NCBI GenBank assembly: GCA_000388065.2
Contig: KB932202.1
DNA: 49,335 nucleotides
Reading direction: 5' to 3' (one strand)
From: Fonticula alba ATCC 38817
Lineage: Eukaryota; Protista; Nucleariida
Numbering within the stretch: the first letter of the stretch is position 1; each line of letters opens with the position of its first letter. The notes below the pieces were generated by a model. It did no database searches, had not been told where the DNA came from, and saw only the letters and a list, made by a program, of their open reading frames with translations. A program made the translations under genes and the position numbers. This document shows positions 7,030 to 26,897 of this stretch, piece by piece.

Positions 7030-9492
7030 TCATTGCGGCGAACGCTGGCCGGCGGCCGGCTGTGGGCGCCGGTGGCCGCCGCGGCCCGATGCATTGTCCC
7101 GGCCGGCGCGCTGGCCGCCGCCATGCTGGCCGCTGGCCGGAGCACCGGGCCGGCGGTCTTGCTGCTCACGCGTGGGCCTGTTTCTCTGCCCATCGGCCAG
7201 ATGCTTCTGCTGGTAGGCAGCGCGGTAGCGCAGGAACAGCTCCACCAGGACCACCGCATCGTTGACCGCGTAGTCCACCTGAGCAGGATGCATGTCCTCC
7301 TTCCAGAGGCTCCAGTCGGCCATGGTCCAAGAGCTGTCCAGCAGCACGCCAAAGCAGAATGCCACCATGCCCTTGAGACCTTTGAGGCCTTTCGAGTCGG
7401 AAATCCCTGGGAAGGGATGCCCCCAATCGCGCAAGGGGGCCGGCACGGTGTGCATGTGCCCGGCATACTCCGGCGGGATGTCCGCCGGATAGCCCCCCAA
7501 GCTGGGGCGGTGCTGTGTGCTGGGCTTTTTGTTGTCCGAAGGCTGCGTCGGATGGTCCGCCAAGTCGATGAAGGACGGCATGTCCCCAGGCATTTGGAGA
7601 TAGCTGGCCAGTGGGACCACATCGCTCGAGTAGTTGTAAACAAGGTTCACCCACGACCGGTGCTGGTCATGCACCGTGAGGTACTCCCGCAAGCAGGCAG
7701 TCGCCAAGTCCGGGTGCTTGGCCATGCTGAAGAGGAAGACCACCGAGCGCCGGAGTGCCGCGGCGACACCGTGCCAAGTCAGCCGGCCAAGCGCTTCGGC
7801 CGGCAGCGGCGTCAGGCACACCTGCACCAGTGCCGGCACCTTGGACTGGGCGTTCGGGATGGACTCGGTGTCGAGGGCCGAGATGCCTCCCTGGCGGTGG
7901 AGCATGGCGCAGAATGCCTCGGCCGCGGCAGGCGTATCGACCCACACGACCTGCACACCGGCCGGGCGCTCGTACATTGGGTACTCCGGGCCCGCGGTGG
8001 CGGCCACGGGGTGCGGTTCGATGCCGACCTGGCGGATGGCATAATGCAGCAAATTGATGCTTGCCAGGTTCGTGAATGCCACCGGCCGCCAGCCGACCGA
8101 GCGAAGGGGCTTGTAACTTTGGGACCAGACAGTGAGACTGAAGGAATCCCGCTGCAGTTTCTTCTTCATCTTCTCAATGTCCCAATAATCATTCATGAGG
8201 CCCAGCAGGGGGATGCCTGAGTAGGGTGCTTGTGTCTGTCAGCAATCGGTCACCGGTGTATGTATGTGCATGTGCATGTGCATGTGCGTGCGTGCGTGCG
8301 TGTGTCTTCTTCCGTGCCCATCCCCTCCCTCTGGTCGTCCATGTTTCTGTTTCACTCGGCAGGGCAGATGTGTCTCGCCGGGGCGGAGGATGCCGGTGAC
8401 CCGGCGAAGCGGCATGGCCTGGGCCCGGAGGCGGGGAACGCACAGCAACGAACAAAGTAGCTAGCACCCACGAAGAAAGGCATGAATGGCTCAATCGCAA
8501 GGGCATCGCGGATCACCATGTCGAGCTCGTCATCCAAGATGCCGGACACCTTATACTTGGCCATGTGCCTGTCAAAGGGCATCTCAAGCTCCTTGTCCAG
8601 GGCCATCAGCCGCGCGCCGAGCTCCCAGGCCGGGTTCTCGGCCAAGACGCCGAAGGACACCACCACCGCCGCCAGGGCCTGGGGCAGCGGCGAGAGGGGG
8701 GAGGGGCGGCGAAAGGCAAGGCGGCACAGCCGAAGGTCAGACCGCGCAAGCTTCCCACAAGCAGAGGGGCAAGGGAATAGGGGGGAATTTTTCGGCACCC
8801 AGGCGCCCCGGGAGCGTACTAGCATGTTGGCGCGATCGAAGCGCGAGTGTTGATCATAGCCACCAAAGAAGGCATTGAGGTCACTCTCCACAGGGACGGT
8901 CCCCTTGTTCATAAAGTCAAGGACTGGGTGACAGCGGGTGGCGATGGGCGGCCCCCTCGCAGGAAGTTAGCAAAGTGCGGGACAACGGCATACAGGGGGA
9001 TCTTACGGGCGCGGCCCTTGGAAATCGGCCCCGGCGCCTCCTCGAGTGGGGGTCACGACTGGAGGGCCGGCGGCGATGCCTGCCAGGGCCGAGCCCTTTT
9101 GCTCTCGCCCCCCCCACGTCCCCCCCCCCCCGCCTCCCGAAAGCGACGCACAAGAGCGGCCGCGACCCGGCGCAAACGCACCCATGGTGGCAACCTGTCC
9201 GTAAGAGGCCTTCTTGATCCGCTTGTCAGCGATGGTATACTGGGTGTAGAGGTAGTCCAGCAGCCTCTTCTTGGCGTGGGTGGTGGGAGTTCACGGGAAG
9301 ATGGATGACCGCTCTTCGGGCATGGTCACCCGGGAGCCCTCCTGGCTGGAGGCATGTTCGGCAGGCGAGAGAGTCTGCACATGGTGTGGCAGGGCAAGTC
9401 AGGCCAATGGCTGGGCGAAGGACAAGGGAGTAGGGCAGTTGACTCATGCTGCTGTCGGGGGTGGACAGCAGTCTGCCATTTCGACGGACCAT
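7030..9492 (-). CDS. Paralog A: DEDDy 3'-5' exonuclease (WRN-exo/Mut-7/EXD-like) with unknown N-terminal domain, about 538 aa, 5 exons (9490-9492, 9182-9269, 8820-8923, 8444-8678, 7030-8216)
   Basis: ExoI SALDTES, ExoII YNYSSD, GLKGMVAFCFG, ADW and ExoIII AQVDYAVNDA are all present. The GT-AG introns join into one open frame of 1617 nt. The exon 5 and exon 3/4 boundaries are firmer than exons 1-2. Confidence 0.88.
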
Positions 9493-10890
9493 GGGGTTTC
9501 GCTGATGTGGTGGAGGTTCTGGTAAAAAGGAGAGGGCGGGCGAAAGGCGGGGGTGACTGTGCGGCAGGCAGACCAGATGCCATCCAGGTGACTTTTATTT
9601 GTGTGCGAGGGGACCAGCGCTGGGACCGGCACTGGGGCCGGGGGCGGGGGGAAACGAATGTCGTCCGGCCAGCCTTGGGGTGGGGAGCCGCGCAGCTGGC
9701 CTGGGCATGCCGGCGGCGCCCTCTGCGGCGACCCAGACGCGCTTGCGGACCCGCAGGGCGTCGCCCCGCGCTTGCGGACCAATGCCAATGCGAGTTGGCC
9801 GCGCCGGCCCGGCCGGCCCCGCCCTAACACGGGCCGCCAACTTCGATGGGTCTTGGTGGAAGGACACGCACAGCGGCGTGCACCCTCCACCGGGGGAGAC
9901 CACCCCCGCCCCCTCGCCTTCTGTTCTGGCGGCCCTCCCGCGTCCGCCGGCAGGGCGAAGAGTGGCCCCAGGCCCACAGGGGCAAGTGTCGTTGCATCAT
10001 CTTCGACGGAAGGCCCGGCCACCACTCCCTGTGCTCCGGCGCAGGGGAAGCCTGCCCCTCGGGGGCGAGCCGCGCCGGGCGTGTTTTCAAATTGGCCTCA
10101 TCTGGTTCGTTGGGAGCACAGGCCCCGGGTGGCTCCCCGGGACGGGCGCGCCCGGCGTCCCGAGCCGGGTTCACGAGCGCCTCCGAATGGGGGGGCTCCA
10201 CAATGCCGGCGCAAGAAAGCGGGCGCCGTGCACGGCGGCAGCCAGGCGGCGGGGCCAGCCCGGCCAAAAGCTCGCCCCAGGTCGGGGCACGCCCGCCGGG
10301 GGAGCCCGGCTCGCCGGACACCACCCGGCCTCTGCGGAAGGCAGGACCACGGACACCGGAGAGGGCAGGTGCCGCGCCGCCGGGGAATCCTCGCGCCTGC
10401 TGCCCCTTGCGATGGCCGGGCGCGGCCGTCTGGGCCGGGCACCACGCGCCTGTGCGAGCGTCGCCCCTTCCCGGCGGGGGCCTGATGGCGGAGTCCCCCG
10501 TGTCGGGCGTGCCTCTCTATGCTGCGCCCTGCCCGGCACGGGGCACAGACCTGCACCCCTGGCCGCTCTCCGGCTCATGACGCACGGCCACCCGTGCCGC
10601 ACAGACCCCAGCGCTGTGGCAGTCCCTGCCTCAGGCCCGGAAGGGGAGGGGGCGTTACGCAAGCTTCACTTCGACCTCCCAGCCCAGGCCGCCCCCTCCC
10701 GCGCGCGCGCGCACACCGCTTTTGCCCACCGGCCGGATGGGGCGCCCCAAAAAAAAGGCCCGCCGCATGACCTGCAGCCACGCCAAGCCCTTGCCCTCCC
10801 CCGCTCCCCTGCCCCGGGCCTGCGCCCGCCTCGCTCCGTGGCCACGCAGGGCCGCCCACTGCTCCGGCTGCCAGCTCCTCCGCGCGTGCC

Positions 10891-10954
10891 GCACGCCCAG
10901 CCAAGGCCGACGCCCGGCCGCACGCCCAGCCAAGGCCGACGCCCGGCCGCACGC
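10891..10954. repeat. 29-bp tandem repeat, 2.2 copies (GCACGCCCAGCCAAGGCCGACGCCCGGCC)
   Basis: Direct reading; no spacers. Confidence 0.9.
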
Positions 10955-11026
10955 GCCTTCCCATCAGGCGGACGCGCACCAGGAAAGAGCAAAAGCCGAG
11001 GAATAAAAAGAGCAAGGGGGTCCCGT

Positions 11027-13611
11027 CTATTTCCCCAGGACCGGCTGCTGGGGAAGGACCACCGCCGCCGGGGGGGGCCGCTGGACCTCCGGCGGGTCGG
11101 CCGGGCCGGCCTCCAACCGGGCCGCCTCGCGGCCCAGCTGGTTGACCGACTCCAGCAGCGACTCGACCGCCAGCCGGGAGAAGGTGGTGGCCAGGTCCCT
11201 GGCCCCGATGCCGGTGGTCACCCCGACGGTCACCTTGAACACGGTGCCGATGGTCAGGCCGTCGGCCATCTTGACCGCCATGCTGGCGGCCATGTTGGTG
11301 GCCAGCCGGGCGGACATCTTGGCCGCCTGGCGCGACGCCTCGGCCCCGGACTCCTCGCCGGCCAGCTGCCCGGCCAGGGAGGCCGTCGTGTGCAGGGCCT
11401 CCCGCACGGACTTCTCGTCCAGCTTGCCGTCCAGCATCTTGTTGGCCATCTTGGTGGCCATCTTGGCCGTCATCTTGGTGGCCATGCGCCCGGCCATGCG
11501 GACCGCCGAATTGGCCGCCAGCTTGGTGGTCACCCGGGCCGCCTCGGAGGCCGCCTTCTTGCCCAGCAGCTTGGCCGTCTCGTCGACCGGCAACCCGGCC
11601 GCCAGCAGCTCCAGCGTGCTGGGCGAGGGGGCGACCGCGGCGCCATCCCCCGCGGCGGCCCGGGCATCCTCCCACTCGGAGTCGCTGGCCCAATCCGGCC
11701 CCCGGTCGATGGTGTCCCAGCCGAGGTCCCCGCCGAGGTCCCACTCGGAGTCGCTGTCGGACCCGCTGTCCGAGCAGCCGCCCCCGGCCCGGCCGGCCGG
11801 GTCCCGAAGCGCCGCCTGGAAGGCCGCCTGCACCGCCGCCTGCACCACATCCTGCGTGATGGACAGCGAGGCGCCGGCCAATTCGGCGTCCTCCTCGGCC
11901 TCGGCCTCCGGGGCGGCCAGTTCCTGCGTCGAGGCCGCCCGGCGAGCCGCCGCCTCGGTGGCCACCTGGGCCGCCGTGACCCCGGCCAGCATGCGCACCG
12001 CCACCTCGCGATCCCGCTCAAACAGGCACCCCATGTGCTCGTAGTAGAGGAAGAGCTCCACCAGGATGGCCGCATGCTCGAAGAGATCCGGCCCCCGGCC
12101 GGCCGACCGGAGGCCCGCGATCCACCCCCCCTCGAACCCCGGGCAAATCCGCACCAAGTCCGCCAGGCCGCGCCGGCCGCTCAGCGGCCCGGACACCTCG
12201 TGCTCGGCCCCGCTGCGGGCCTTCTTGCCGCCGAGCTCCGACCCCGGCGGCAGGGCCAGCTCGATGAGGCCCCCGTGCGCATGGTAATCCAGCGGATCCA
12301 CCGGCAGGTCGAAGATGTGGCTCCAGCTGTAGCACAGCCGGACATTGCCCCGGCACAGGCCGGCCTCGGCATAATTGCACAGGTAGAACCCCAGGCACTT
12401 GTAGGCCGTGGCGTCGCCCAGGTCAAACTCGAACACCTGGGTCTTGCGCAGGCTGGCCACCAGGCCGGCCGTGTCCGCCAGCGAGGAGGGCAGGTCGCCG
12501 CGCAGCGGGGTCACCGCCACCCGGGCCCGGACCGGGCCGCGGGCCTCTTCCCCCGGGCCCGGGGCCCGGCTCGAGGTGATGGCCGCCACGCAGTGCCCCT
12601 CCACGGCCATGCGCCGGAAGAGGCCCCTGCCTGCCTCGTTGTCCACATACACCAGCCCATTGGCCCCGAGCGTCAGGAACATCTGGTTGAACACCCGGCC
12701 GATGGGCACGTCGCCCGGCCGGCTGGCCGGCGGCGCCCGGGCCGTGCTGTCGTCCGCCCACTTGTCGATCTTCCGGCCGCTGCGCTGGCGCAAGTGGTCC
12801 AGGACATCTGTCACCGCGTGGGCCCGTGCAATGTGCGCCACCAAAAAAAGCGGGTCGCCGAGGTCAGTGCTGCTGCGCGCCAGGCCTTGGCCCGCCCCCG
12901 GTCACCAGGGCACAGCGCCCGACGCACGTTTGGTATGCAGCCGAATGTCATCGTCCTCCTGGTAGAGGCACAGAAAGCCCCGGAGCAGGCGGAAGGCGGT
13001 GGCGCTCGTGTCGGCCCCGGCCGGGTCGTCCTCCGCATTGGCAAAGTGCATGAGCAGTATCCCCAGAAGCCGGAGCACGCTGTCGCGCGGGTGCTCCTCG
13101 AAGTGGCACGGTGCGACGCCCCGGCGGTCGATCACAAAGTGCACGAGGATCTGGGCCCAGTGGCGGAGTGGTGGCCGGTGAGACGCCGAAGCTCGGGCAT
13201 GTCGCATGCCGCACATGCGCGGACCATGGGCAGGGGGGGGGGGGGAACACTCGGAGCGCACCAGCACCATGGTCTTGTCCATGACAGAGAGGTCCTTGAA
13301 GTGGGCGTGCTGCTGCTTGACAAAGTCCACCAGGTGGTCTTGCCCGCTGGCCGGGCCGGGCCAGGAGGCGAATGGCTGGATGTCATCGTCTGGACAGAGG
13401 GCGTCGGGGTCAGAGGGGCCGGGGCACAGGCGTCGCACGGGAGCGGCACGGCATCGACGCACAGACACTAGAGGCGAAGTCGAAGGATTTCTTCAGACGC
13501 CGCGAGTCGCCGGTGATGTCCGGCTTGGTGTTTGTTCGGGGGGGGGGGGGGGGCGGTTAGCAGGGCGGCGACGCCGTTGAAGGCGTGGGCAAAGCAAGGG
13601 GCCCCTACCAT
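11027..13611 (-). CDS. Paralog B: catalytically inactive 3'-5' exonuclease-fold protein with long C-terminal extension, about 731 aa, 5 exons (13609-13611, 13463-13523, 13262-13389, 12928-13150, 11027-12807)
   Basis: Aligns to A (YVDNEAGRGLF, RVAVTPL, SLRKTQVFEF, GLADLVRICPG, AAILVELFLYY), but ExoI reads AAITS and the ExoIII Y and D are lost. Intron phases match A; the spliced frame is open (2196 nt). Confidence 0.8.
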
Positions 13612-13756
13612 GGCTGCGACCGAGCGGGGAGGCCGCAGACGAGAGACGCAGAGACGGGGGAGAGAGAGAACGAAAAAAGCAAAAGCGGTGGGTGGGGTTG
13701 CTGGGGCCTCCTGGGCGCTGAGCTGGCCCGGCCGGCCGCCCAAAAATCCGCCCCCC

Positions 13757-13766
13757 NNNNNNNNNN
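13757..13766. other. Assembly gap (10 N)
   Basis: N run within a poly-C tract. Confidence 1.
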
Positions 13767-15167
13767 CCCAAAAACCCCCCCCCCCCCCCCCCCCTCGGGT
13801 GGCTGCCCGCGATCGGGCGCGGGCGTCGTCGGCGATCTCCCCTCCGCAGGCTGACCCCCTGGAAGGAGGGGTCGCTGTTGATTTGCCGGGCGGAGGGGGG
13901 GGCGACCGCGCCGCCGGCGGGCCACGGTCCTCGTCGAAGGGCATGGCCTCCCTTGCCCCCCCCGGGGGGGAGAGTCGGCAGGAGGGCCCCCCTTGCCCCC
14001 CACGCGAGCCGGTGGGCCCGAGTGCCCGGGCGATGCGCCGGCGAGCCGGGCCCACAAAAAGCCGGCCCCGCGTCGCGCGCATGTTCCCATGGCCCTCCCG
14101 CGCTCGGCCCCCGTCCCAGCTGCCAAGCCCGCGGGTCCCCCCGCGGGAACGCCCTGCTCCGATCGAAGGGCACCCGGCGCCACAAGAGGAAGGCCTGGCT
14201 GCCCGCCCGCGAGCAACACGGCACCCCCGCAAGGCCGGCAGCCCTCCGCATCGGGAAACCCGGGCCGCTTCCGGTCCAGGTGCCAACGGTGGTCATTCCG
14301 CCCTGGGGCGCGGCCGGCCTCGCTGGTGTGGCGTCTCCGGGCCCCCCGGCCCTGCCGCGTGCGGGCGCGACGCTTGTCTTCGATTCCGGGCGCCGCGAGA
14401 GCGGGAGAGATCGCAAGATGGCAAGGTTGACAGAGCGAAAGGGCACGAGGGATCCGGGCGCCCTGATCCGCGCCCAGATCGCACCTGGCAACCCTCCCCC
14501 CCCCAGAATTATGGACAGCCACCCGGTCCAGTGGCAAAGGCAGGCATGCAAAGAGCCTTGTCCTCGCCTGTGCCGCGTTTTTGCCAGAAAAGGCCCATGG
14601 GACAGCATGCGCGTCCCATCTGCGCATGGTACCCGCCCGCGTCGCGCGCAGGCCCCCTTTGGCCAGCGGACCCCCAGTAGCAACGTGGTGCTTGTGAATC
14701 CGCCCTCTCTACGACACGCCTCGCGGGCTGACCGTGCTCTGCACTGTCCTCGCGATTGAGGGCGACGCCGCCCCGCATGGGCCGGTGCAGCGCGCGGCCG
14801 GAGGCATTGACAAGCCGTCCGGCCAGCCCGCCCGGCGGCAAAAGTGCCCAGGACACCCGGCAAGCGAGACACCCTAGCCCGGGCGGGCTTGTCCCCGGTT
14901 GTCCTCACAAGGGAGCACTGACCGAGACTGCTCCGACGGCCAGGTGGCCCAGCCTCGAAGGCCATGCATCCGGAGGACCCTCCCCAGGGACTTCGCCAGC
15001 GGGTCATGCACGGGCCGGAGGGATGTTTCCTCAAGGCGTTCGGCCGTTCGCACGCAAGGCCGCCCCGGCATCGATCCTGCGCGTTGGACCCCCTCCCCCC
15101 CCTCCCCCCCCCCTCTGGACATGTGCTTTGGGGCATATGTTCGGAGCACAAGGAAAGAGTGACACTT

Positions 15168-15173
15168 TTTATT
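15168..15173 (-). promoter_or_regulatory. Candidate polyadenylation signal AATAAA for paralog C
   Basis: TTTATT on the + strand, about 150 nt downstream of the paralog C stop codon. Confidence 0.4.
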
Positions 15174-15322
15174 GGTCCCAAGAGACGGTGCACACATCGA
15201 ACTCATACAGGCCGGATTTCCTGGAGAAGAGGAGGCTGAGCGCGTCACACTCTATGCATAGACGTATGGGCACGCGCCCCTCCCCCCTCCGCCAGCTCCC
15301 TCTCTGGAGTCCGCATGGTCGC

Positions 15323-17678
15323 TCATTTATGCAAGGTGTACATGTGCAGCGAGTAGAGGAATAGCATGTTCCCCAGGAAAGCATACTCGGTCCAGTACCT
15401 TCTCTGTGCCGGGCTCTCCCGCCCATCGGCAGGCAGCACCAGCATGTTCGCCACCCTGGGAGCAACACACAGGCCGAGAGTTTCCTGGACCATGCCCTCG
15501 AATGGGCGCGTCTGATCCACGGAAAAGAGCCTGTGGTCACTGTCCGTCCGAGTGGCGGCCTCTTGGTCGGCGCTGGTAGGCGGCGCTGCAAGGTTGATTC
15601 CATATTTCTGGGTCGCCACCTGGAAGGCATCAAATAGTTCGAGCAGCTCGGACTTCTGGCCATAGTGGATCCGGGGGTTCTTTTTGGCCCCGGTGGCCTG
15701 GGTATTTTGCTGGTAGAGAATTTGCAGGGCTTCAAGGGTGAGTCTCGGGTGTGTGAGTGGCTCAAATTGGAAGACGCGCGTCTGACCCAGACTCCACATC
15801 ACCTTGGGGTAGGATTTCACCAAGGTCGAGAGGGGAAGCCCCCGAGGGGAGACACTGCCACGCGAATCACCCACACCGGGGTCGAGGCCGAGCCGTCGTC
15901 CGCTCCCGCGACGCCCCGGCGGTCGATCACAAAGTGCACGAGGATCTGGGCCCAGTGGCGGGGTGGTGGCCGGTGAGACGCCGAAGCTCGGGCATGNNNN
16001 NNNNNNNNNNNNNNNNNNNNNNNNNNNNNNNNNNNNNNNNNNNNNNNNNNNNNNNNNGGGGGGGGGGGGGGGGGGGGGGGGGAGGTATCGCGCCACATGG
16101 ATGAAAGAGACCACATGTTGCGACTCCACCTGCTGGATGAAGTCCATAAGGGCGACCTCTGTGTCGACCAAAATACCGGCCGCCGTCAGGCCATAGTGTT
16201 CGAGACTCGGCAGGTCGGCCGACAGGGCTGCTCGCTCGGGCGAAAGCACACTCTGGAGCACATTCAAGGCGCCCTCCACCATGTCCAAAGGTCGGCCATC
16301 GATCCACCACCCGAAGACGGGCATCTTCGCCAGCGTATTCTGAAGCATCTCGGTGTTGAGCGAGTTCAAGATTTCGTTGGCCCGGCTATGGACTGTGCCG
16401 CCCGGGCGAGGTTGTGGCATGCAAGACAGCGACGCATGCAAGTTAGTGGGACAGCACTGACAGCCGGTTCGCCCCCCCCGCTGGAGCCCGCGGGGAGGGA
16501 GCTGCGGGGCTTTGCCAGCCCGGACCGCCGCGCCTGCGCATCCTTTCCCAGGGCCGCTCGGTCATGGGCAGCGAGGGGCCAGTTGGTGGAGATTGCGGGA
16601 GGGGGGGGGGCGTTTGAGTGTTGCAAGGGGCCTGGCGGCGTGCAACCACCAGGCCGTGTGGGCTTCCCCCCCCCCCCCCCCCCCCCCCCCGGCGTCTCGT
16701 GTTGAGGGGGAGGGGAGAATCCTCACATGTACAAGGACAGCGGAGGGCGCACTTCGCCTGACATCCTGCCAGAGGTACAAAATTTCCGGCGGAAAGATAT
16801 TCATAAAGTGCAAGAGAGTGGCACAGGCGAATGCAGTGCGCATCCGATCCTCTGGACGGAGGGTTCCCCAAGCCTCATGATGGAGTTTCAACTTTCCGCT
16901 CAGCGTGGCGGCCAAGAGGCGGATGAACCGGATACAGGAGGCCTCGTGGAGTGAGGGGCTCAGCAATAGCCCCACCTTGGGCAAGAACCAGTACCGGCGG
17001 ATGGAAGGGTCGGGTTGGGCAAGCCAGAGGCGGGGTGTCAGTGGGTCGGTCGCATCGCGAGGCCGGCATCATCTTTTATCCATGTAAGAGCGCGCCCGAG
17101 CAAGGACCACGCGCTTCGAGGTCACTGTTTGTTCTGGGTTGTACCAATACACTGGCTTGGCCAAGCACATTGTTGATGACGGCGCTGTAGAAGTAGTCCA
17201 CGCCTCCGTGGTGCTGGTAGATGTTGACGGTAGCGGCCTGGACTGTTTGATGTGTATATTTGTGAAAGCGAAAGAGGGGGCAGGCGAGGGGCAACGGGTC
17301 AGCATGTTTCCGGTTAGATGCTCGAGCTGGGGATCAAGAACAGAAGGCATGGCATTGTGGGGCCGGGCAATCTCGGCGCGCGCGTACTACTTGGGGCCAG
17401 GCGCGGGTAAAGAGCGTGTATGTCCAAATCCACGGGATTGATGCCAACACACAGAAGCCCATGTCCAGGGTTCGTGGCGGCCGGCAATTCATTTTGCGGC
17501 TGTGCAAGGAGAGTAGTCTTGAATGTGGCGGCGGCCGGCCGTGGTGCCGACATGACGAAGTGGGGTCAGCCAATCGGATCGCAAGCATCTTTTACGGGAG
17601 AGAGAGAGAGAGACGCCCCCCCCCTCCTCCCCCTTAGACCCGACAGACCAAAAGCGCACGTACGGGGGGCGTTGTCAT
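15323..17678 (-). CDS. Paralog C: inactive exonuclease-fold protein, 5 exons (17664-17678, 17388-17517, 17145-17242, 16753-16975, 15323-16392); last exon has a gap, an 89-bp foreign insert and a 1-nt frameshift
   Basis: Motifs LVDTEVALMDF, IRVAVSPL, SLGQTRVFQF, FEGMVQETLGL and SPAQRRY align to A and B. ExoI reads SFIHVA. Intron phases are 0,1,0,1. Exon 4 is 223 nt, the same length as in B. Confidence 0.72.
15908..15996. repeat. 89-bp copy of 13113-13201 (paralog B intron 3/exon 4 junction), one mismatch, next to an N gap
   Basis: Direct comparison of the two segments. Confidence 0.92.
15997..16057. other. Assembly gap (61 N)
   Basis: N run next to a poly-G tract. Confidence 1.
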
Positions 17679-17967
17679 GGTTGTCACTTGTTGTACGGGT
17701 GCCGGATGTTTTGGGGATATCCGTGCGGGGCAAAGGAAAAGGGGCCACGGGGTGAGGGCGGCGTCAGGCAGGTAGAAGAGGGGAGACGAGCGGGGCTGAT
17801 GTATCGAAGGGGGTGTGCTCTAGTGGAAAGAGCAATGGCCGCTTGAAGGGCCCCGTCCCCTCTCAAGTTCCCCCTCTGGGCCGCCCGAGAGTCGTCACAT
17901 CACCAGGAAGACACACCCCGGCGAGGCATCTACTGGGAGACATGACAAGGATGAGGGGAAACAATGA

Positions 17968-18340
17968 TCAAATTTTTCCCCGAGTGAAGGTGCGCGTGCC
18001 AGCGCCGCTGTAGAGGGAACACCCAAACGCCGGCTTCGGCTCAAGCCCGCTCACCCGGCACGACGGAGGCTTCGCCTGGGCAGGCGCCAGGGACTGGGGC
18101 CAACCTCTCACCCGACTCCCACCATAAAATTGGCGAGTTCCGCCAGGGCTAATCGCAGTCGCCTGGCGTCGGTCCATGGAACAGTACACTGCGCTCTCCC
18201 TGGCTGAGACCGACGAGGAATGCCCCCCATGCCCAGTTTGTATTTTTTGTCGCGAAACCACCCCCCGGCCGGATGGTCATTGCAGATATTCACAACGCTT
18301 ACCAGCACGGGGAGTACTGCCGGGCACGCGCTGGGCAGCA
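17968..18340 (-). pseudogene. Possible decayed exonuclease-family paralog (C-terminal part)
   Basis: LAELANFMVG resembles LADLVRICPG (B) and VAHLARWNIG (D). After a frame change, GWPQSLAPAQ resembles the W..PAQ lead-in to ExoIII. Stops and a frameshift are present. Confidence 0.35.
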
Positions 18341-18361
18341 TCAAGTTGCCAGGGCTTACCA

Positions 18362-18363
<2 letters not shown>

Positions 18364-18408
<45 letters not shown>

Positions 18409-18417
18409 TGTGTGTGT
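18364..18417. repeat. (GT)n microsatellite, about 27 units, one AT interruption
   Basis: Direct reading. Confidence 0.97.
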
Positions 18418-20330
18418 ACCAGGGCTTGTGGGTTCCTGCGGTCGAGAGACGAGCAAAAGTACACCCAGGGAGGGGCATTTCCTTGGCGGAGGGGGGGGGG
18501 GGGTAGGGGGGGCTGATCAAGCGGGCGAACATGGGTTGGTCCCAATGTGATGAAATTGCTAGCACCCTGTGCCGGCAGGGGGGCCCCCTTTTCCCCGGTC
18601 ATTCTCGACCTTTCTGGCGAACGCTCTCCTGGGGCCATCGCCACCACCGGTTGTGGCTCACCTGTCTGGTCGGAGGCCGAGCTCTTTTCTCCTACACCCG
18701 GCCAACTGCACCGCAAGGATTCCCGATCTCAATCCCCAGGCGGGTGCGACCATATCCTGGGCCGTCCCTCGAAGCTGTGCAGGCCCCAACAGACACACAC
18801 GGGTCCCTGATGGACAGATGATTCGCTCAAAAGGGGATTTATATCCTTCCTGCTCGTCGACTCCCTGCCGCCTGAATCGGGGGTCGCCCTCGATAGAGGA
18901 GTGAGAGAGCTGTTGCCCAGCCGCGGGGCCTGCCAACAGAAGCCTGGTCCGCCTGTGCTTGCGGGCTCCTTGCTTCTGGGACGCCCAGGGCACTGGCCGG
19001 CCATTACTGGCCCCGTCACCACTCCCTGCCCCGGGGGAAACGAGGGATGCTTCTACCAGTGTGCCATTCTCACAACTGCACCCCGGAGCGTGTCCTCCCC
19101 CCCCCCTGGGGACTACGGCGCGCCATCCGAGGTCACACCCCTCCTGGCCTGCAGGGTACTCCGTGTGGGTGCATATGTGTCGCTCCGTACATGAGCGCCT
19201 GCAAAAAGAGCGCCCGTATGAGCTGCATACGTGTGTTTGAGTCGATTCGCGTATGGTGAACGCACCCATTTTCACGCCTTTGTCCGATGCCTCGCAGGTA
19301 CCCTTTGGCGCGACCAGAATGGGAGCAGCTTCTCTCGGAGAAACTGCCCGCCGACGTCTGCCTAAGGCACAACTCGACCAGTCGACATTCTACCTTGAGG
19401 ACTCTGCCGGTACAGCGCTAGTAGGCACTCGATTGTCCTCCCCCGCGCTCCCCCCCCCCCCCCCCCCTGCCCATCGATCACCCGTCCGCTGGCATGGTCA
19501 ACATACCCCAGCGGACCCGGCCACGCCCGGAAGGGTGAGCGGTAGAAGAACGGCCCGACGAGACCAGGCGCGGTCCGGAACCAGCGTGTGTCATTAAGAT
19601 CTCTGGCCGGCAGCCCCACGTCGCCTACACCCTCCCTGACCCAGTGGAGATGCTCTGCCGGGCCGAGAGCTCCGAGAGCCAGACCGCCTGCCGCCCCCCT
19701 TCCCCCCTCCCCCCTCCCCTGGGCGCCCGCACCCAATCCCCATCCGCCCGGGCTGCCTGAGCCCACCAGGGCCACGCACAGCCCACAGAGGATACAAGCA
19801 AGCGGCCGTTCTTCATCCATGAGAGGCGACCGAAGGCAGGCCAATGCAACCAGCCTCCAAGGCCAGCAAGTAGCCAGCGCACAACCGATCGGCCAAACTA
19901 CTTGAGTCTCTCTCCGCGTCCCCACGCGCAGACTCCAAAGTGCCAATGATCCTGCGAGCATGGTATCCTTCGTTCACCAAGCCCACAGTCTTATCTCGAG
20001 ATTAAACCCACGCATGTGGCCCTCACAGAGGGGAGCGCGTGGCCAATTTTCAAGCCTCCCTAGCCCCACCACCCCGCCAGATGAGCCAACGTTTCGAAGA
20101 ATGGCATGACAGGGCACACGAAAGAGAAAGGAGAAGGTGGAGCGGTTGCCCGAAAGGGTGGGGTGTGCATATTTTTCGTGCCCCCATCTTAAGGCCCGGA
20201 ATGGCATGGCGGCGCGCCGCCTGCCAAGCATCGCCCTATCAACCCCTTTCCTCTGCCAGCGGCAGCCGCCTCCACACACACCTCGTCGCTGGGCACACAG
20301 AATGAACCCCCTTGCCTGGGAGGGCCTGAA

Positions 20331-20332
<2 letters not shown>

Positions 20333-20362
<30 letters not shown>
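20333..20362. repeat. (GT)15 microsatellite
   Basis: Direct reading. Confidence 0.95.
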
Positions 20363-20363
<1 letters not shown>

Positions 20364-21075
20364 GAGACGGCGGCCGCTGACAGAGGAGGGGGGCTGATAG
20401 GGCGATGCACACCTCGAGGCGCCAAGGGCCAGCCTGACCATGTCCCACCTCCGGGAAGCGCCTGAGACCCCTCTGCCTCCCCCTTTCATGTGGGCATTCC
20501 CGCAACCCCTGCCTCCCATTCTGTGGGTGGCCTCGAACTCGACAGTCTCGCGCTACCACGCCGACAACCGGCCCCGGTGTGCACCACATGCCTTCGAAGC
20601 GTTAAGGAAGCGCCCTAGACGGGTTGGACGTGCGTATATAGGTACACACAGACACACATGATTTCATGCGACTGGGCTCGGGCATCCCAATAGTCAGGCG
20701 CCTTGCATGCTCCCTGCCACTGGCATGCCCGAAGTGCTGTGTTCGCTTTTGCGCGTGCGCATTGATCTCCCACAGCGAATCCCGGCTTGACATCGCACCG
20801 GGGGGCTCTGTTCCGCCACCGGGGCAGCGGACCACCCATGCACATGCGCTTGTATGTCTACATGAAAACACGCACACTTGCGCGCCCGCGCGTGCCCGGT
20901 ACCGCCCCCAACCATGAGATGACGGCTGCCGCGTCTGAGGAACACCGGGGCACCAGCGAACGGCCAGGAGGGAGGGAGCTGGCGGGCATGCGCCAAAGGC
21001 CACGCTCCCTCGTCATGGCTGGGGCCGACCCCGGGCGCCGGACTTGCCGGATGGTGCCGGGGGTACCTTGGGCCC

Positions 21076-23059
21076 TCACTTGCAAATGGCCATCTGGGAG
21101 TGACAAACCAGGGCCAGGCACATGAGTAGTTGCTCCTTGATGGCCTGCTCACGGTTGAGTGCTTCATCGATGTCCCCAGCTGCGGCCATGTCCAGGCCGA
21201 TGTTCCACCGGGCAAGGTGGGCCACAGAACGCTCGCCCGAATGGCCCATCACCGAATGTGAGTCGTACGCCCGCGGGAAGGCCGTCCGGCCGCTCGGCTC
21301 TCGGGACAGGTCCACCGTGTTGAAGAGGTCGGCGCGCCTCTTGCCCGGGCTGCTACCTTCCACTATGATGTGGGGGAGTGGGACCCCGTGGACGAGAGCG
21401 CACACCTCCTCCAACAGCGAAGCTTGCCTGGCACCGTGGATAACGCGTGTGTTGTTGGGCACACCGGACTGGGTCTTCCTCGGGAGGATCTCCCTCACTA
21501 TCGGCCAGGACTCGGGCAGCTTCAGGTCGAGGGTGATCTTGAACAGGCGCATGGTGGCCTGCTCGATGCCCTCCGGGCCAACGGCCGTGATGTAGTCCGC
21601 GAAGGCGTGCGGCATGTCCCACATGGCCATGTAAAGATCCGCCCGGGAGATTGTCCCATCTTCTGCCCGGACTACGTTATCGATGAAGAGCGAAATGAGC
21701 TCGAAGTCCATCACAACAAAGCGCGACAGCTGCTTGGTGCCGGGTAAATCCCACGCGTTCAGGCACTCAAATTCAATGCCGGCCCCGATGGAACCGGCCC
21801 CGGCCGCGGAGGTCTCCTCCTTCGACGGCACCGGCTTCGGCGCCAGCAGCAACAGCTGCACCAAGTCCGCAAGGTATCCTTCGTAGTTGTGCCCCGAGGG
21901 ATCCACCAGGAACCCGTGTTTCTCCGGCTCGTCCAGCAGGCTGGACATGTTGCTGACGAAGCCTTCGGTCGGGTCTCCCGCGCGTTCCACGTCTACCGGG
22001 GGGGGGGGGGGGGGAGGAGGAGGGGTGTTAGCGAGCAGGACCGCATGGTTGGCCGGGTCGCAGGCCATGTGTCTGGCGGCTCAAGAGGCCTATTAGAGGA
22101 GGAAGCCTGCCCCCGGCATGTGGTATGTCCAGCTCCTCCCCCGACAAGTCAAGGCAGGACGCGCACACTTCTTTACAAACGATCGCATCCTGGGCGACTT
22201 CAGCATCGGGACCAAGGGGCCCAGCAGGGCGAGAGACGCCTGTGCCTGAGTATGGCGGTCGCTCCTGCACGAGAAATACTCATTGAGACACAGCGCGTTC
22301 TTGATGATGAGCTTGTGGGCCAAGATCTCCAGGGGGAGCCCCGTGGCAAGCAGCCCCTTCTCGGACAAAAATCGCAGCATGACCTGCAGGTCAAGTGTCC
22401 GGCGGCAAGAGGACCCCTCGCGTCAGCAACTCCCGGGACATGTTGGAACCAGAGGCAAAGAGGCCATCCCCCCCCCCTCCCCCGCTCTGAATTCTCTGGG
22501 ACATACCAGAGCATTGGCCTGGGCCACAGGGCAAAGATGTCGAAGGTTCTCGGTGATAGTCGCGGCATCGAGCTGGCTAAGGGAATCGCTCAAAGCACCA
22601 CCCAGGGACACTGCAAGTGGCGATGTCGCGCCGAGACGGAAGCCCATGCATGCACAGGTACCCGCGCAAATACAGACGCAAGATACCCCCACCCGGAGCA
22701 TGACAGATCCCATGGTCCAAGGCACCGGGCGTTGGGGGACACACACCAGCCCCGCAAGATGAGCACATTCAACCGCAAGACGCCAGGTTAGATGATATCC
22801 CCCCGGGGAACAAGGCCAGGGGGTGGCGACACATGCGCGACATACACTTCCCATCGAACGGCACAAGAGTCGAAGAACAGCGCGGGATCGCCCCGCCGAC
22901 ATGGTAGAATACCATGGCCAAGCCGGGGGCGCACCTGCGGAGGCCAATTTCGTCCGAAGCTTGAATAGTCTGCTGTCAGGGTTAGCATATGCCTTTGGGC
23001 CGAAGACTCCATGGCACCCATGGTACATCCCAGCCCCCAGACTCCAGCGCACGTACCAT
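21076..23059 (-). CDS. Paralog D: inactive exonuclease-fold protein, about 455 aa, 5 exons (23057-23059, 22846-22972, 22507-22610, 22167-22383, 21076-21992)
   Basis: ATG|GTACGT first exon. Exon 3 is 104 nt as in A and ends AQANAL|. Motifs ISRADLY (ExoI Glu lost), RVIHGARQASLLE, TVDLS and SVAHLARWNIGL. The spliced frame is open (1368 nt). Confidence 0.78.
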
Positions 23060-23667
23060 GCTAAAAGAGGACGGCTCGATTCCTGCCACAAGACTGCACC
23101 GGGGAAGTGAAGAAAGAGGAGAAAAGGAAATACACACACGCGTATGTGTGGGGGAGAGGGAGAATTGTAGAGCGAAGGGGCGGAGGTGAAAAGAGGGAGG
23201 GAGAGGGGGGAAAGGAACCAGGAAGGCTCTTTTCTGGCAAGGCCCCAGGCCACTACCAATTTTGGCCCATCTCCATCAGGCTCTAGCGCCCACCCCGCCG
23301 GCCCTGGCCGTCCGCATGGCGGCCCCATTCTCTGCCAGTACCCAGTCGCCGCCGAGCTCCCACGTTGAGGGATCTTGGTGTCGTGCGGCGACCCGATTCC
23401 CTAGGTCGCGCGCTTCCCTCTGCCTGCACGGGCACGTCCATTTCACCGGGCCCGAGCCGGGCACCCTCGATCATACCCGGGTTGAGTGCGTCCACACCTT
23501 TTTCGGCCTAGCCATATATTTGGCCCAACTCAATTGCGTCATCATTCGGTGCCCCTGTGTTGCGAGGGCCTGGAGCGGGGGGTAGCCGCTCCGAATGGAT
23601 ACACAAACACCGGCCGACGGAGCCCTGGTAAGCAAGTGCCCACGGCGTGAGGCCAGGGCTCCGGCTC

Positions 23668-24200
23668 TCAACAGGGGCCGATGTTCCAAGGCCTGCACCT
23701 TGGAAGGACATGCATTTGGAAGGGTGCTTCTCCTTTCGGCCGCACCAGCCAAGCCGAGCCCCATCCGCTGGGGTCAGCAGTCGGGAACACAAGCAGGGCA
23801 GGGTGCGCTAATCCGCAACAGCCTCGGCTCCGAAGCACCACGGTCCGCTGGTCGGCCCCTTGGCCAAGACCTGGCGTTTGGTGCTTCCAAGACCCGAAAG
23901 CAGACACCTCGGCCGCGGGGCGGCGGGTGTGGAGCCGCGCCCGATCTCCACCAGCCCATGCCCTAAAGTCTCCCGTGCAACCACGAGGAGCTCATGGGAC
24001 ATTTCGCACGCTGCCTTTTGTACATCATGCAGCGAATAATGTCGCCCACCATGCGCTGGGGCGGGATCAGGACAGATGCCCTCGCCCGCAGCCCCCCTGC
24101 CCCGGATCCCAGGCCCCGCTCGATGGTGGTGCCTCGGCACAAAAAATCCTGCAAATATGCCGGCTGGTGGGATACATTCAGAAGAGTAAAGGGAAATAAA
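23668..24200 (-). pseudogene. Possible decayed exonuclease-family paralog
   Basis: SHELLVVARETLGHGLVEIG resembles the ExoII and 'IDL' regions. In another frame DQRT..GL..LLVFPTAD..APFQ resembles paralog C DQTR..GL..MLVLPAD..SPAQ. Frameshifted. Confidence 0.3.
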
Positions 24201-24663
24201 AACATGGGAATAAGCGAAGAAGAAAAGAAGGGGGAAACAATGCGCCGACAAAAGAGGCGCGAAACAAAGGCAACACGACAGCTGGACGCAAAAAAGTGAG
24301 CAAGCCCAGAAATGGGGCACAGCCTTGATAGGCTGAGGGAGATGGAGGGGAGGGGGCGCGGTAAACCGCCGAAGACATCACGTATCAGCCAGACGCTTGA
24401 CCTGCGTCCCAGGATTTGACCACGCATCCCTCCGGGCATCAAGCAGCCAGAAGGGGAGGGGGGGGGCACAGGCGAGACGGGGAGAGCAAGATGGCCACGG
24501 TTGGCGCGGAATGGTTGACCTGAGAGCCAGGGAGCTGCCCACTACTGACAAAGAACCCCTTGATTCGGGGCGAGACAGCATCAGACGGTAATAGTGGGAC
24601 ACTTTTTCATCCAGTGGGGATCTTCCTGCCAGGCTGTGATAGCTTGGGCATATCCAAATCTAA

Positions 24664-26718
24664 CTAAGTGGCAATGGACTGATCCGAAGTAGAAGTGGTT
24701 TTGGCCTCGGTTTTACACTTGTCACAAAGAATAGCAGTCTCAGAAGAAGAAGAAGAAGAAGGAGGAGGATTGGGAGGGTTTGGCGGGAGCAAATACAAGT
24801 AAAGAATGGCCATGATCCGCTCGATGCTGCCTTGAGCGACATCCCAATCATCCTCACACAGCAACTTGGACTCATGGAGGTTTTCGTTCGCCAGATCCAT
24901 GCGGAAGTTATCGTCGACTAGCTTCCGCAAGTTGTGTCTACCTGGTGGAGGGTTTTTCCCCTCTGGCTCATTATTGGGTTTCAAACCAATGTCGACGATT
25001 TTGTCCGTAGAGCATCGGTTTTCCAGAATACTCAACTGTTTACGCAGACCGTCAATCAGATCATCTTGATTAAAGATGACCAGCTTGCTGAATGATTCGT
25101 TGTATCGACGAGAAGCCAGCAACTTAGTCATACAATCCGAGGCATTCTTTGAATCAGTGGATTTGAAATTGAACTCGAACAGAGAAGCTTCCTGCAGAGC
25201 TTGGACCTTCTCATATGCCTCAATTTTGTCAGATGGAATATTGACAATGGCAACTCGAGCATATGCTACCATCTCCTCTTCAGCTGCCTTGACAAGTTCC
25301 AAAGAAGCCACATAGCGCTGCTGGATGATCTTGTCGAAGTCCTTCCTGGCACACTCATCAGAAATATCCCGCACTTTGGGAAGGACCTTCGGCCGAGAGG
25401 GGTAGAGGAAGTGATGCTCGGCCAAATACTTGACATTGCGCAGGCCATGACAAAACAATGAGTCTCCCTCCTCTGTCTTCCGGAAGGTCACACCACACCT
25501 CTCTTTGGTCAAGATGAGAGAAACAAGCTTGTCCTCCACATCCTCGATCTTGGGTCCCTCGCTCCACACGCCCATGCTCCAGGAGGTGGTTGGGTCCGTC
25601 TTGAGGTTGTTCACACAACGGAGCAGCCCAGCTTCATCCGGCAGGTAAATTTCTTTCGTCATGGATTGAATGGAAGCCCCACCATGGTTAGAACGGTGGC
25701 CAATAGAAAGAGGCGCAGCGGTGGAAAATGACGCACCTTTCGGCCAAGTATTGAGGGGCTTTCCCGACCCAGAGGTCCCAGCCGTGGCTTGGGCGGGCTG
25801 AGGGAGGTGCTTAACGGTGTAGTGAGTGGTATCAAGGAAGGGCGCAACCGTGTACAGGGCAAAGTAGATGGCCTGCATCTCGAAGGGGCGGACGCCCTTT
25901 TCAAGAATGGATAGCATATCCTGGACGAAATCAACAACGGCCAGCTTGTATCCCAGAAATCTGTTGACCAAATCTTTGTCGTCTTTGAGGAAGATGTGGA
26001 CCATGGCCTGGGCGAGTCACGGAAGCATGTCAGTGGCTGATATGATGTCGAAACTTGATGCGGGCCGCATTAAGCGATGTCGAAATGGCCGCCGATGAGA
26101 CTGGATAAAAACACACCAGGACGTTTGCCCTGCGAATCGGATCGAAGTTATGTGACATTTTGTAAAGCTCAATAAGCTTTGGCCGATTCTTGTCATCCTT
26201 CTTGACTACTTGGAGGGCGGGGGGCATTCCCACAAGTGTGTAAAGGGGATGCACAAAAATTAGCCATAGCAGAATACGTAGCACGGCAGGCACGGTGCCA
26301 TTTATCGTATGGTCCATTGTGCAAGGCGACGGAAGCATGAATACATATGTTCTTACGTGTTAGAGCGGCAACAAATTGTCAAGAGCCAGAATAGAGCAGG
26401 TTGAAAAGGCTTGGCACTCAACCCGGGCGATAGCAAACCATGCGGAGGGCCACCACAGGAGAAGGCCACTTTCGGACGTACGTCTGTCAAGGATCTCTTT
26501 ATAATACTCTTTCTCCTCAGCTCGTGCAATCACCACCCCAAGGGAGTAGAGGGTGAGACTTTCACTTTTGACAAATAGCGGGGCGCCTGTGGGCCCAGTC
26601 TAGGCGGGGAGTAAATGCCGTTCGTTAGGGGCTTGGGCAGTTGCAGAGCCATTTATGAAAGGCAGCGAGGATCAGCCATGTCCGACTCATAGAAAGGGGA
26701 GACCAGTGTTTGTACCAT
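24664..26718 (-). CDS. Paralog E: inactive exonuclease-fold protein, about 490 aa, 5 exons (26716-26718, 26482-26599, 26117-26208, 25737-26007, 24664-25652)
   Basis: Exon 3 ends IRRANVL| (A: FDRANML|). Motifs ARVAIVNIP, ALQEASLFEF, IVDIG and NLRKLVDDNF. ExoI reads ASLELV. Intron phases are 0,1,0,1; the spliced frame is open (1473 nt). Confidence 0.8.
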
Positions 26719-26897
26719 TTTGATATCGGAATGAGGGTAGGCTACCTACGCTAAAACAGAAAGGTAGGGCTGAAATTGAAACACATGCGATGCTGGGGGC
26801 AGGGGGGGGGGGGGGAAGACAACAATCCACAGGAGGGGCCCGTGTGGAAGAGCTCAATGTGTAGGGAGTGTTGGGGTCTCTGCAAGCACCTACGGGT

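What the first reader, a model, noticed from the sequence alone, without database searches (positions are those of the whole stretch)
7030..25652. One active nuclease and four pseudo-nucleases in the array
Seen: only A has the full DEDDy set (ExoI D-T-E, ExoII YNYSSD, ExoIII Y-A-V-N-D). The ExoI D-x-E positions read T-S-S in B, H-V-A in C, D-L-Y in D and E-L-V in E. The ExoIII Y..D becomes D..H in B, Y..Y in C and K..L in D, and is absent in E. B, D and E still keep open frames and canonical splice sites. Established: inactive EXO-fold proteins such as Drosophila Exuperantia act as RNA-binding or scaffold modules, often as dimers. Inference: the inactive copies may be partners, decoys or specificity subunits for A.
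Basis: partly seen in the sequence, partly recalled or inferred. Interest (0 to 1): 0.8.

Follow-up and report, generated by a model that had tools for sequence, protein, structure and literature searches.

The report
Exonuclease gene array with degenerate copies
The amoeba Fonticula alba has a row of related genes in which one copy looks like a working 3'-5' exonuclease and at least two others have lost the catalytic residues yet are still made, one of them at very high level; this is a lineage-specific case of the known "dead nuclease" theme.

Summary
The window is Fonticula alba scaffold KB932202. Genes A-E (H696_01335, 01336, 01337, 01339, 01340) all lie on the minus strand.

- **A:** keeps the full DEDDy set (D230-T-E232, D313, Y430/D434). 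So do two paralogs on another scaffold.
- **B:** a demonstrable paralog (hhalign E 1.4e-6).
- **E:** a probable paralog (p about 0.004-0.005). Part of its model folds like a DEDD exonuclease (Z up to 9.5). It reads E-L-V at ExoI, keeps the ExoII Asp and has no ExoIII.
- **C:** its 3' half is a paralog of B (z 6.5) with Y..Y at ExoIII. The true ExoI position falls at the 15997-16057 gap and cannot be read.
- **D:** only weak sequence support (p about 0.05) and a failed model. It does share an exact intron position and phase with A and a second-scaffold paralog.

RNA assemblies show D and E spliced at GT-AG sites. E has roughly 100 times D's depth.

So "one active, several dead but maintained" largely holds. 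The partner or decoy role is untested. The family has no relatives outside Fonticula.

The parts
7030..9185 (-). Gene A (H696_01335, 509 aa): N-terminal helical domain plus a DEDDy exonuclease domain with all five catalytic residues. ExoI is at 7875-7861, ExoII at 7638-7621 and ExoIII at 7272-7258.
   Evidence: Pfam PF01612 scores 23.1 bits against a cut-off of 23.6. ExoIII matches RNase D, NrnC and Mut-7 chains. hhalign to a canonical small DEDDy protein gives E 4e-11.
11027..13611 (-). Gene B (annotated 731 aa). The exo-like domain is in the large ORF 12901-11930, followed by a roughly 300-aa Ala/Lys/Met-rich tail (11929-11030). ExoI is T-S-S (12580-12566), the ExoII region is 12331-12308, and ExoIII is D..H (12088-12074). 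N-terminal-domain exons lie at about 13390-13262 and 13150-12928.
   Evidence: hhalign A-family vs B: probability 90%, E 1.4e-6, 205 columns. Smith-Waterman shuffle z 8.9-10. Leave-one-out profile 17.1 bits against a shuffled maximum of 0.9. Gene range. The intron between 12927 and the last exon is unresolved.
13757..13766 (.). Assembly gap beside a C/G homopolymer run, 146 nt upstream of B's annotated start codon. It lies outside all coding blocks.
15169..17678 (-). Gene C (annotated 398 aa), incomplete. Piece C5 (about 16400-16083) matches the family's N-terminal domain. Piece C3 (about 15865-15326) matches the exo domain from beta2 to the last helix. ExoII reads Y-G-Q-K-S-E (15664-15647) and ExoIII reads Y..Y (15397-15383).
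   Evidence: C5 vs A-family profile p 0.0023. B-C3 Smith-Waterman z 6.5, p 1.4e-4. C3 vs four-member profile p 0.0012. GC3 0.73 against GC2 0.41.
15908..16057 (.). An 89-nt, 99%-identical copy of B's intron-exon boundary (13113-13201) sits directly against the 61-N assembly gap. It is read out of B's frame by the C ORF. C's ExoI position falls here.
21076..23242 (-). Gene D (H696_01339, 435 aa; CDS 22915-21076). RNA-supported exons are 23242-23057, 22969-22846, 22610-22505, 22381-22167 and 21992-21076 onward. Candidate ExoI is D-L-Y (21645-21631). Candidate ExoIII is E-A-L-N-R (21168-21151).
   Evidence: Spliced RNA contigs, depth about 30. The model equals P0008 exactly. Weak profile match p 0.0034. 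Leave-one-out p about 0.045. The phase-1 intron sits in the same alignment column as in A and P0002. The AF2 model is poor.
23745..26746 (-). Gene E (H696_01340, 489 aa; CDS 26718-24664) with a long 3' UTR. RNA-supported introns are 26715-26600, 26481-26206, 26116-26008 and 25736-25653. ExoI is E-L-V (25305-25291), ExoII is N-Q-D-D (25074-25060), and the terminal helix without Tyr/Asp is at 24828-24790.
   Evidence: RNA contigs at depth about 3000-4000. The upstream exon joint was found at 26717. The model equals P0003. Profile match p 0.0035. A-E Smith-Waterman p 0.004, collinear. Leave-one-out: 1 of 400 shuffles reached the real score. AF2 residues 250-345 have pLDDT 62-85 and a beta1-beta2-beta3-alphaA-beta4-alphaB order. 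Foldseek and VIA top hits are DEDD exonuclease folds.

Best explanation
The stretch holds a Fonticula-specific tandem family of same-strand genes. Each is built from an N-terminal helical domain of about 190 aa followed by an RNase D/WRN-type (PF01612-like) DEDDy 3'-5' exonuclease domain.

**What each copy looks like.**
- Gene A keeps all five catalytic residues. It is presumably an active two-metal-ion 3'-5' exonuclease (inferred, not assayed).
- B and E are diverged paralogs. They have lost the ExoI Asp/Glu pair and the ExoIII Tyr/Asp, so they cannot use the canonical mechanism.
- C is a paralog, but its ExoI region is missing at an assembly gap.
- D is a probable paralog with the same losses.

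**Shown.** D and E are transcribed and spliced, and E has about 100 times D's RNA depth. All copies keep long open frames and coding-type codon periodicity.

**Inferred.** The dead copies are retained as non-catalytic proteins. By analogy with EXD1, Exuperantia and PML-PXL they are most likely nucleic-acid-binding or scaffold modules. Whether they act together with A is unknown.
For: **Identity and gene order:**

**Pentad in A and in the paralogs P0002 and P0004:**. ExoIII and ExoII equivalence to canonical enzymes.

**A-B homology and residue equivalence:**

**B-C3 homology:**

**E.**
- Collinear profile and Smith-Waterman matches.
- Partial AF2 exo fold with Pol nu, Egalitarian, Rrp6, EXD2, RNase D, Nibbler and EXD1 as best structural matches.
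- The phase-0 intron after R-A-N-x-L is in the same place as in A.

**D.** A phase-1 intron lies in the same MAFFT column as in A and P0002. There is a weak collinear profile hit.

**Transcription and splicing of D and E:**. The same RNA runs hold 54-59% of the sampled words of the A-B region, which is about what the exons of both genes would give.

**Codon periodicity.** GC3 is 0.57-0.97 against GC2 of 0.36-0.55 in all five. It is absent in the neighbouring 203-aa annotated gene.

**Precedents for inactive DEDD domains acting as RNA or DNA binders:** PMC4712191 and PMC13659232.
Against: - No Pfam, NCBIfam, PADLOC or ESM Atlas signal for B-E.
- hhalign of the A-family profile against C, D and E alone is not significant.
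- D's best pairwise alignment to A is off-diagonal. Its leave-one-out p is only about 0.05. Its model is unusable.
- E's model was built with the family in its alignment, so the fold is not fully independent of the assumed homology. Overall pLDDT is 46.
- B's intron between the N-terminal block and the exo block is unresolved. Without it a stop at 12904-12902 separates the two blocks.
- Transcription of A, B and C was not shown gene by gene.
- No activity, binding or interaction data exist.
Confidence: 0.6

Rival explanations
1. The dead copies are obligate partners, decoys or specificity subunits that form heteromers with the active enzyme A.
For: - The genes are clustered and co-oriented.
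- They share an N-terminal helical domain that could mediate association.
- EXD1 and Exu act as dimers.
Against: - No interaction test was possible.
- E's RNA depth is about 100 times D's, so the members cannot all be equimolar.
- Two further pentad-bearing paralogs lie elsewhere without nearby dead copies.
Confidence: 0.2
2. B-E are decaying duplicates without function. They are transcribed only incidentally.
For: - Catalytic residues are lost.
- Divergence is extreme and no homologs exist outside the species.
- C is truncated as assembled, and B's junction is doubtful.
- Long ORFs arise easily in DNA of 65-75% GC. One example is the 1290-aa antisense ORF over B.
Against: - D and E are precisely spliced and give intact ORFs.
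- E is very abundant and has only 49% GC, so its 450-codon open frame is not a chance event.
- All copies show GC3 well above GC2.
- Frames stay collinear with A despite identity of 25% or less.
Confidence: 0.12
3. The family is smaller than claimed. D is an unrelated orphan gene that merely sits in the row, so there are at most three degenerate copies.
For: - Leave-one-out p about 0.045.
- hhalign gives nothing.
- The best A-D alignment is non-collinear.
- Two MAFFT runs disagree on D's placement.
- AF2 pLDDT is 40 and the Foldseek hits are meaningless.
- The Atlas is uninformative.
Against: - An exact phase-1 intron coincides with A and P0002 in an alignment built without intron information. 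A second intron lies 2 nt from A's phase-0 intron.
- A collinear local profile hit covers V-D-L-S ... H-x-V ... G-L-D.
- D has the same strand, the same two-block gene layout and a similar size.
Confidence: 0.2
4. Some degenerate copies keep nuclease activity through non-canonical residues. E, for example, has Glu at the first ExoI position and keeps the ExoII Asp.
For: E279 and D358 align with D230 and D313 of A. From my own knowledge, some DEDD-fold proteins with imperfect motifs, such as yeast Pop2, are reported to retain activity.
Against: At most two of the four metal ligands are present in any of B-E, and the general-base Tyr is missing except in C.
Confidence: 0.08

Closest known systems
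RNase D / Rrp6 / WRN-exo / Mut-7-Nibbler / EXD2 type DEDDy exonucleases (Pfam PF01612, DNA_pol_A_exo1)
   Same: A, P0002 and P0004 carry ExoI DxE, ExoII D and ExoIII Yx3D in the right order. Their ExoIII block matches PF01612, TIGR01388 (RNase D) and PDB chains of RNase D, NrnC and Mut-7/Nibbler. E's model aligns best with this group of folds.
   Different: - Only the ExoIII part scores. A is 0.5 bit under the Pfam cut-off.
- There is an insertion of roughly 80-150 aa between ExoII and ExoIII.
- An unmatched N-terminal helical domain of about 190 aa precedes the exo domain.
- No full-length relative exists among 1.84 billion representative proteins outside Fonticula.
EXD1 (inactive DEDD-family partner of TDRD12 in the piRNA PET complex)
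   Same: A PF01612-type fold whose DEDD residues are replaced. It is inactive as a nuclease and binds ssRNA through the dead core (PMC4712191). EXD1 (5fis) is among E's structural matches.
   Different: - EXD1 is a conserved animal single-copy gene with an Lsm domain and a C-terminal dimerisation hook.
- The copies here are species-specific, sit in tandem beside an apparently active paralog, and have a different N-terminal domain.
- Dimerisation and RNA binding were not tested.
Exuperantia and the PML-1 PXL domain (pseudo-exonucleases; PXL's active relative is Plex9.1)
   Same: A DEDD fold with catalytic residues lost, reused for nucleic-acid binding. PXL and Plex9.1 show dead and active relatives side by side (PMC13659232).
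   Different: Those are TREX1-like folds joined to a SAM-like subdomain. No SAM-like part was seen here, and the sequence family is different.
Egalitarian, and the exo-like domains of DNA polymerases nu and theta
   Same: These are the top structural matches of E's model (Z 8.3-9.5). From my own knowledge, the Pol nu and Pol theta exo-like domains are catalytically inactive.
   Different: They are domains of much larger proteins with unrelated partners and functions. The match rests on a partial, medium-confidence model.

Membership tests
PF01612-type DEDDy 3'-5' exonuclease | Profile match at or above the curated cut-off | tested here: inconclusive
   A scores 23.1 bits against 23.6. Paralog P0002 scores 23.8 (passes) and P0004 17.3. 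B, D and E have no hit.
PF01612-type DEDDy 3'-5' exonuclease | Catalytic pentad: ExoI D-x-E, ExoII D, ExoIII Y-x3-D | tested here: met
   Met for A only within the window: D230, E232, D313, Y430, D434. Not met for B (T, S, D?, D, H), D (D, Y, S, E, R) or E (E, V, D, -, -). C is partly unreadable.
PF01612-type DEDDy 3'-5' exonuclease | DnaQ/RNase H-like fold with strand and helix order beta1-beta2-beta3-alphaA-beta4-alphaB | tested here: inconclusive
   E shows this order at pLDDT 62-85 for residues 250-345, and VIA Z reaches 9.5 against DEDD folds. However, overall pLDDT is 46 and the family was in the alignment. D's model is unusable.
PF01612-type DEDDy 3'-5' exonuclease | Metal-dependent 3'-5' exonuclease activity | not testable with these tools
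   This needs recombinant protein assays.
Pseudo-exonucleases (EXD1 / Exu / PXL kind) | Exonuclease-family descent with the metal-binding residues replaced | tested here: met
   Met for B and, with less certainty, E. C is met for ExoIII only. D is inconclusive.
Pseudo-exonucleases (EXD1 / Exu / PXL kind) | Maintained and expressed as a protein-coding gene | tested here: met
   D and E have spliced RNA and intact ORFs. All five show GC3 periodicity. B and C were not tested gene by gene, and no protein-level evidence exists.
Pseudo-exonucleases (EXD1 / Exu / PXL kind) | Nucleic-acid binding and/or dimerisation through the dead domain | not testable with these tools
   No multimer modelling or binding assay was available.

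The most novel reading that the evidence does not exclude
The array is a fast-evolving, lineage-specific nuclease system. One catalytic member works with a set of dead paralogs that have been reused. E would be an abundant nucleic-acid-binding protein that guides, shields or competes for A's substrates. The extreme divergence between neighbouring copies would reflect a conflict with viruses or mobile elements rather than simple drift.
Probability: 0.12. Interest if true: 0.7.

Novelty: new variant of a known kind. Interest (0 to 1): 0.45.

Why it matters
Dead nuclease domains reused as RNA or DNA binders are known from animals (EXD1, Exuperantia, Egalitarian, PML). Here the active form and several dead forms sit next to each other in one genome, in a protist lineage close to the root of fungi. 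The family has no relatives elsewhere. One dead copy is among the strongly expressed genes of the locus.

That gives a compact natural series for two questions. How does a DEDDy enzyme lose catalysis and gain another role? Do such copies work with their active parent?

It also shows that standard annotation misses the relationship entirely. B-E are 'hypothetical proteins' with no domain hits.

Tried and rejected
- **tblastn among the ORFs.** tblastn of each large ORF against the window found only self hits.
- **Domain and feature libraries.** Pfam, NCBIfam and PADLOC gave nothing for B-E. The ESM Atlas gave nothing useful for E or D.
- **hhalign.** The A-family profile against C, D and E alone gave only short, non-significant and mutually inconsistent matches. 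I therefore did not use those alignments.
- **'V-D-T-E' in C (16168-16154).** I considered it as an intact ExoI and rejected it. It lies in the piece that matches the N-terminal domain.
- **Alternative registers.** I considered one for E (exo domain at its N-terminus, from the S-W-S-M-G-V-W-S and D-L-V-N-R-F-L-G strings) and one for D (E-F-E at 'G-I-E-F-E-C'). Both were dropped in favour of the collinear alignment. That alignment is backed by the profile hits, the intron positions and E's model.
- **Exact look-ups.** Look-ups of the D and E ORFs as annotated proteins failed because both genes have upstream exons.
- **B's annotated model.** Enumerating GT-AG models to recover B's annotated 731-aa protein gave 650 candidates and no unique answer. 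The first attempt timed out. I could not look up a spliced candidate without pasting a long sequence, so I left that out.
- **D's structure.** The prediction failed at pLDDT 40.
- **More family members.** A search of the window and of the second locus found none.
Full report
**Source and gene map.**

The window is Fonticula alba scaffold KB932202.1. All genes of interest lie on the minus strand.
- A = H696_01335: 509 aa, 9185-7030.
- B: annotated 731 aa, 13611-11027.
- C: annotated 398 aa, 17678-15169.
- An annotated 203-aa gene at 19269-18658.
- D = H696_01339: 435 aa, 22915-21076.
- E = H696_01340: 489 aa, 26718-24664.

The 203-aa gene shows no codon-position GC periodicity (0.64/0.61/0.64) and is probably not real.

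**The gaps, tested first.**

- Gap 13757-13766 sits beside a C/G homopolymer run, 146 nt upstream of B's annotated ATG. It touches no coding block.
- Gap 15997-16057 lies inside C. Its upper flank is a run of about 25 C (read as poly-Pro).
- Its lower flank is an 89-nt, 99%-identical copy of B's intron-exon boundary (13113-13201). The similarity stops abruptly at 15908 and is cut by the gap on the other side.
- The C ORF reads this copy in a different frame from B.
- The single 412-codon frame that the ORF finder draws across the gap depends only on the nominal 61 N.
- About 160 residues of family sequence are unaccounted for between the two C pieces. The roughly 190 nt available cannot hold them. 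C is therefore either incomplete in the assembly or truncated.

**Gene A.**

- A carries L-D-T-E-S, Y-N-Y-S-S-D and Y-A-V-N-D in the expected order.
- Its ExoIII block matches Pfam PF01612 at 23.1 bits against a cut-off of 23.6. It also matches RNase D (TIGR01388) and PDB chains of RNase D, NrnC and Mut-7/Nibbler.
- A canonical small DEDDy protein matches at hhalign E 4e-11. A global hhalign also pairs the ExoII Asp.
- An exhaustive HMMER search of 1.84 billion representative proteins found only two other full-length relatives. Both are in Fonticula on scaffold KB932217: H696_06053 and H696_06055. Both keep the pentad.
- A is therefore the only complete copy in this array, but not in the genome.

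**Gene B.**

- B is a clear paralog. hhalign gives probability 90% and E 1.4e-6 over 205 columns.
- Smith-Waterman z is 8.9-10 against shuffles. The leave-one-out profile scores 17 bits against a shuffled maximum of 0.9.
The ExoII Asp is probably kept after a two-residue insertion.
- B's frame is open. The phase-1 donor at 12927 has two possible acceptors: a 42-nt intron to 12886 or a 120-nt intron to 12808. Without splicing, a stop at 12904-12902 separates the N-terminal block from the exo block.

**Gene C.**

- The 3' piece aligns with B from the second strand to the last helix (z 6.5, p 1.4e-4). It also matches the family profile (p 0.0012).
- It gives Glu at the ExoII Asp position and Y..Y at ExoIII.
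- The 5' piece matches the family's N-terminal domain (p 0.0023).
- The true ExoI position coincides with the out-of-frame B copy and the gap.

**Gene E.**

- A profile of A, its two paralogs and B matches E collinearly from ExoI to ExoII (p 0.0035).
- The best A-E local alignment covers the same region (p 0.004). In the leave-one-out test, 1 of 400 shuffles reached the real score.
- The phase-0 intron after R-A-N-x-L is in the same place in A and E.
- AF2 with the seven-member alignment gave a poor overall model (pLDDT 46). Residues 250-345 reach 62-85 with the order strand-strand-strand-helix-strand-helix.
- Foldseek's best hits are nearly all DEDD exonuclease folds, but weak (best E 0.024).
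- VIA-align gives Z 9.5 to Pol nu's exo-like domain, 8.3 to Egalitarian, 7.9 to Rrp6, 7.3 to EXD2, and lower scores to RNase D, Nibbler and EXD1.
- The same alignment did not force such a fold on D, so the alignment alone does not produce an exo fold. E's result is still not independent of the assumed homology.
- E reads E-L-V at ExoI and keeps the ExoII Asp (D358). The stretch that should hold ExoIII Tyr/Asp is missing.

**Gene D.**

- Sequence support is weak. There is a local profile hit at p 0.0034 and a leave-one-out p of about 0.045.
- hhalign gives nothing, and the best A-D alignment is off-diagonal.
- The model is unusable.
- The best argument is gene structure. In a MAFFT alignment made without intron information, D's phase-1 intron in F-V-K-K-(Y) falls in the same column and phase as A's in F-V-R-C-(C) and P0002's in F-V-S-H-(A). 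D's second intron lies 2 nt from A's phase-0 intron.
- On that alignment D reads D-L-Y at ExoI, Ser at ExoII and E..R at ExoIII.

**Expression.**

- Four RNA assemblies hold 64-70% of the D-E stretch.
- Laid on it, they show four GT-AG introns in D and four in E. The joined exons reproduce the annotated proteins exactly.
- Word depth is about 30 for D and about 3000-4000 for E in all four runs. This is a crude measure, but the difference is about 100-fold.
- The same runs hold 54-59% of the A-B stretch. That is about what the exons of both genes would give, but it was not resolved gene by gene.

**Coding signal.**

- GC3 exceeds GC2 strongly in A (0.82/0.48), B (0.92-0.97/0.52-0.55), C3 (0.73/0.41), D (0.82/0.43) and E (0.57-0.69/0.36-0.38).
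- E is unusually GC-poor for the locus.

**Reading.**

- The array is a species-specific family. A has an intact active site.
- B and E are demonstrably, and C and D probably, catalytically dead paralogs kept as coding genes.
- Known dead DEDD domains act as RNA or DNA binders: EXD1 (PMC4712191), and Exu and PML-PXL (PMC13659232). That is the most likely kind of role here.
- The partner or decoy idea is untested. The large difference in expression between D and E speaks against a simple equimolar assembly.

Noticed in passing
window 15908-15996 vs 13113-13201: An 89-nt, 99%-identical copy of B's intron-exon boundary lies directly against the assembly gap inside C, while the rest of B and C share no DNA similarity. 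It is either a very recent conversion or insertion, or an assembly artefact at a contig end.
   Followed up: partly
window 18658-19269 (-): The annotated 203-aa gene between C and D has flat GC across codon positions (0.64/0.61/0.64) and an Arg/Gly-rich, low-complexity product. It is probably a spurious gene call.
   Followed up: partly
window 24664-26007: Gene E has much lower GC (0.49) and GC3 (0.57-0.69) than its neighbours (GC3 0.82-0.97). It is also by far the most strongly represented in RNA. The cause was not examined; it could be expression-linked codon usage or a different history.
   Followed up: no
window 11030-11929 (-): B carries a C-terminal tail of about 300 aa, rich in Ala/Lys/Met/Thr with repeated A-T-K-M-like units. 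GC3 is 0.97. It has a weak Pfam hit to a cyclic class IIc bacteriocin family (E 0.056). It looks like amphipathic helical repeats and is absent from the other members.
   Followed up: no
L003 5656-15707 (KB932217.1): The pentad-bearing paralog H696_06053 lies on the opposite strand between two gene calls. These look like the N-terminal (ATP-grasp_2) and C-terminal (Ligase_CoA) halves of one succinyl-CoA ligase beta-type gene. It may be a nested gene or an insertion.
   Followed up: no
P0002 vs P0004 (H696_06053 / H696_06055): The two second-locus paralogs share a nearly identical stretch of about 90 aa from the beta2 strand to past ExoII, while their flanks are much more diverged. This suggests gene conversion.
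   Followed up: no
window 9182-9185 and 26716-26718: A and E are annotated with first coding exons of only 4 and 3 nt (ATGG, ATG), each followed by an intron. For E the RNA contigs confirm the joint (26600 joined to 26717).
   Followed up: partly
window 9599-13471 (+): A 1290-codon open frame runs antisense to B. It illustrates that long ORFs in this DNA of 70-75% GC are not evidence of coding on their own.
   Followed up: no
window 2515-5094 (+): The neighbouring gene downstream of A encodes an 814-aa animal-haem-peroxidase-domain protein with a faint Kazal hit. Another first-stage note covers it.
   Followed up: no
P0005 (ENA metagenome protein, 707 aa): A weak hit of the family profile is a protein made of eight near-identical repeats of about 88 aa. 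Each repeat matches the stretch just before ExoIII. It is probably a translated tandem DNA repeat.
   Followed up: no
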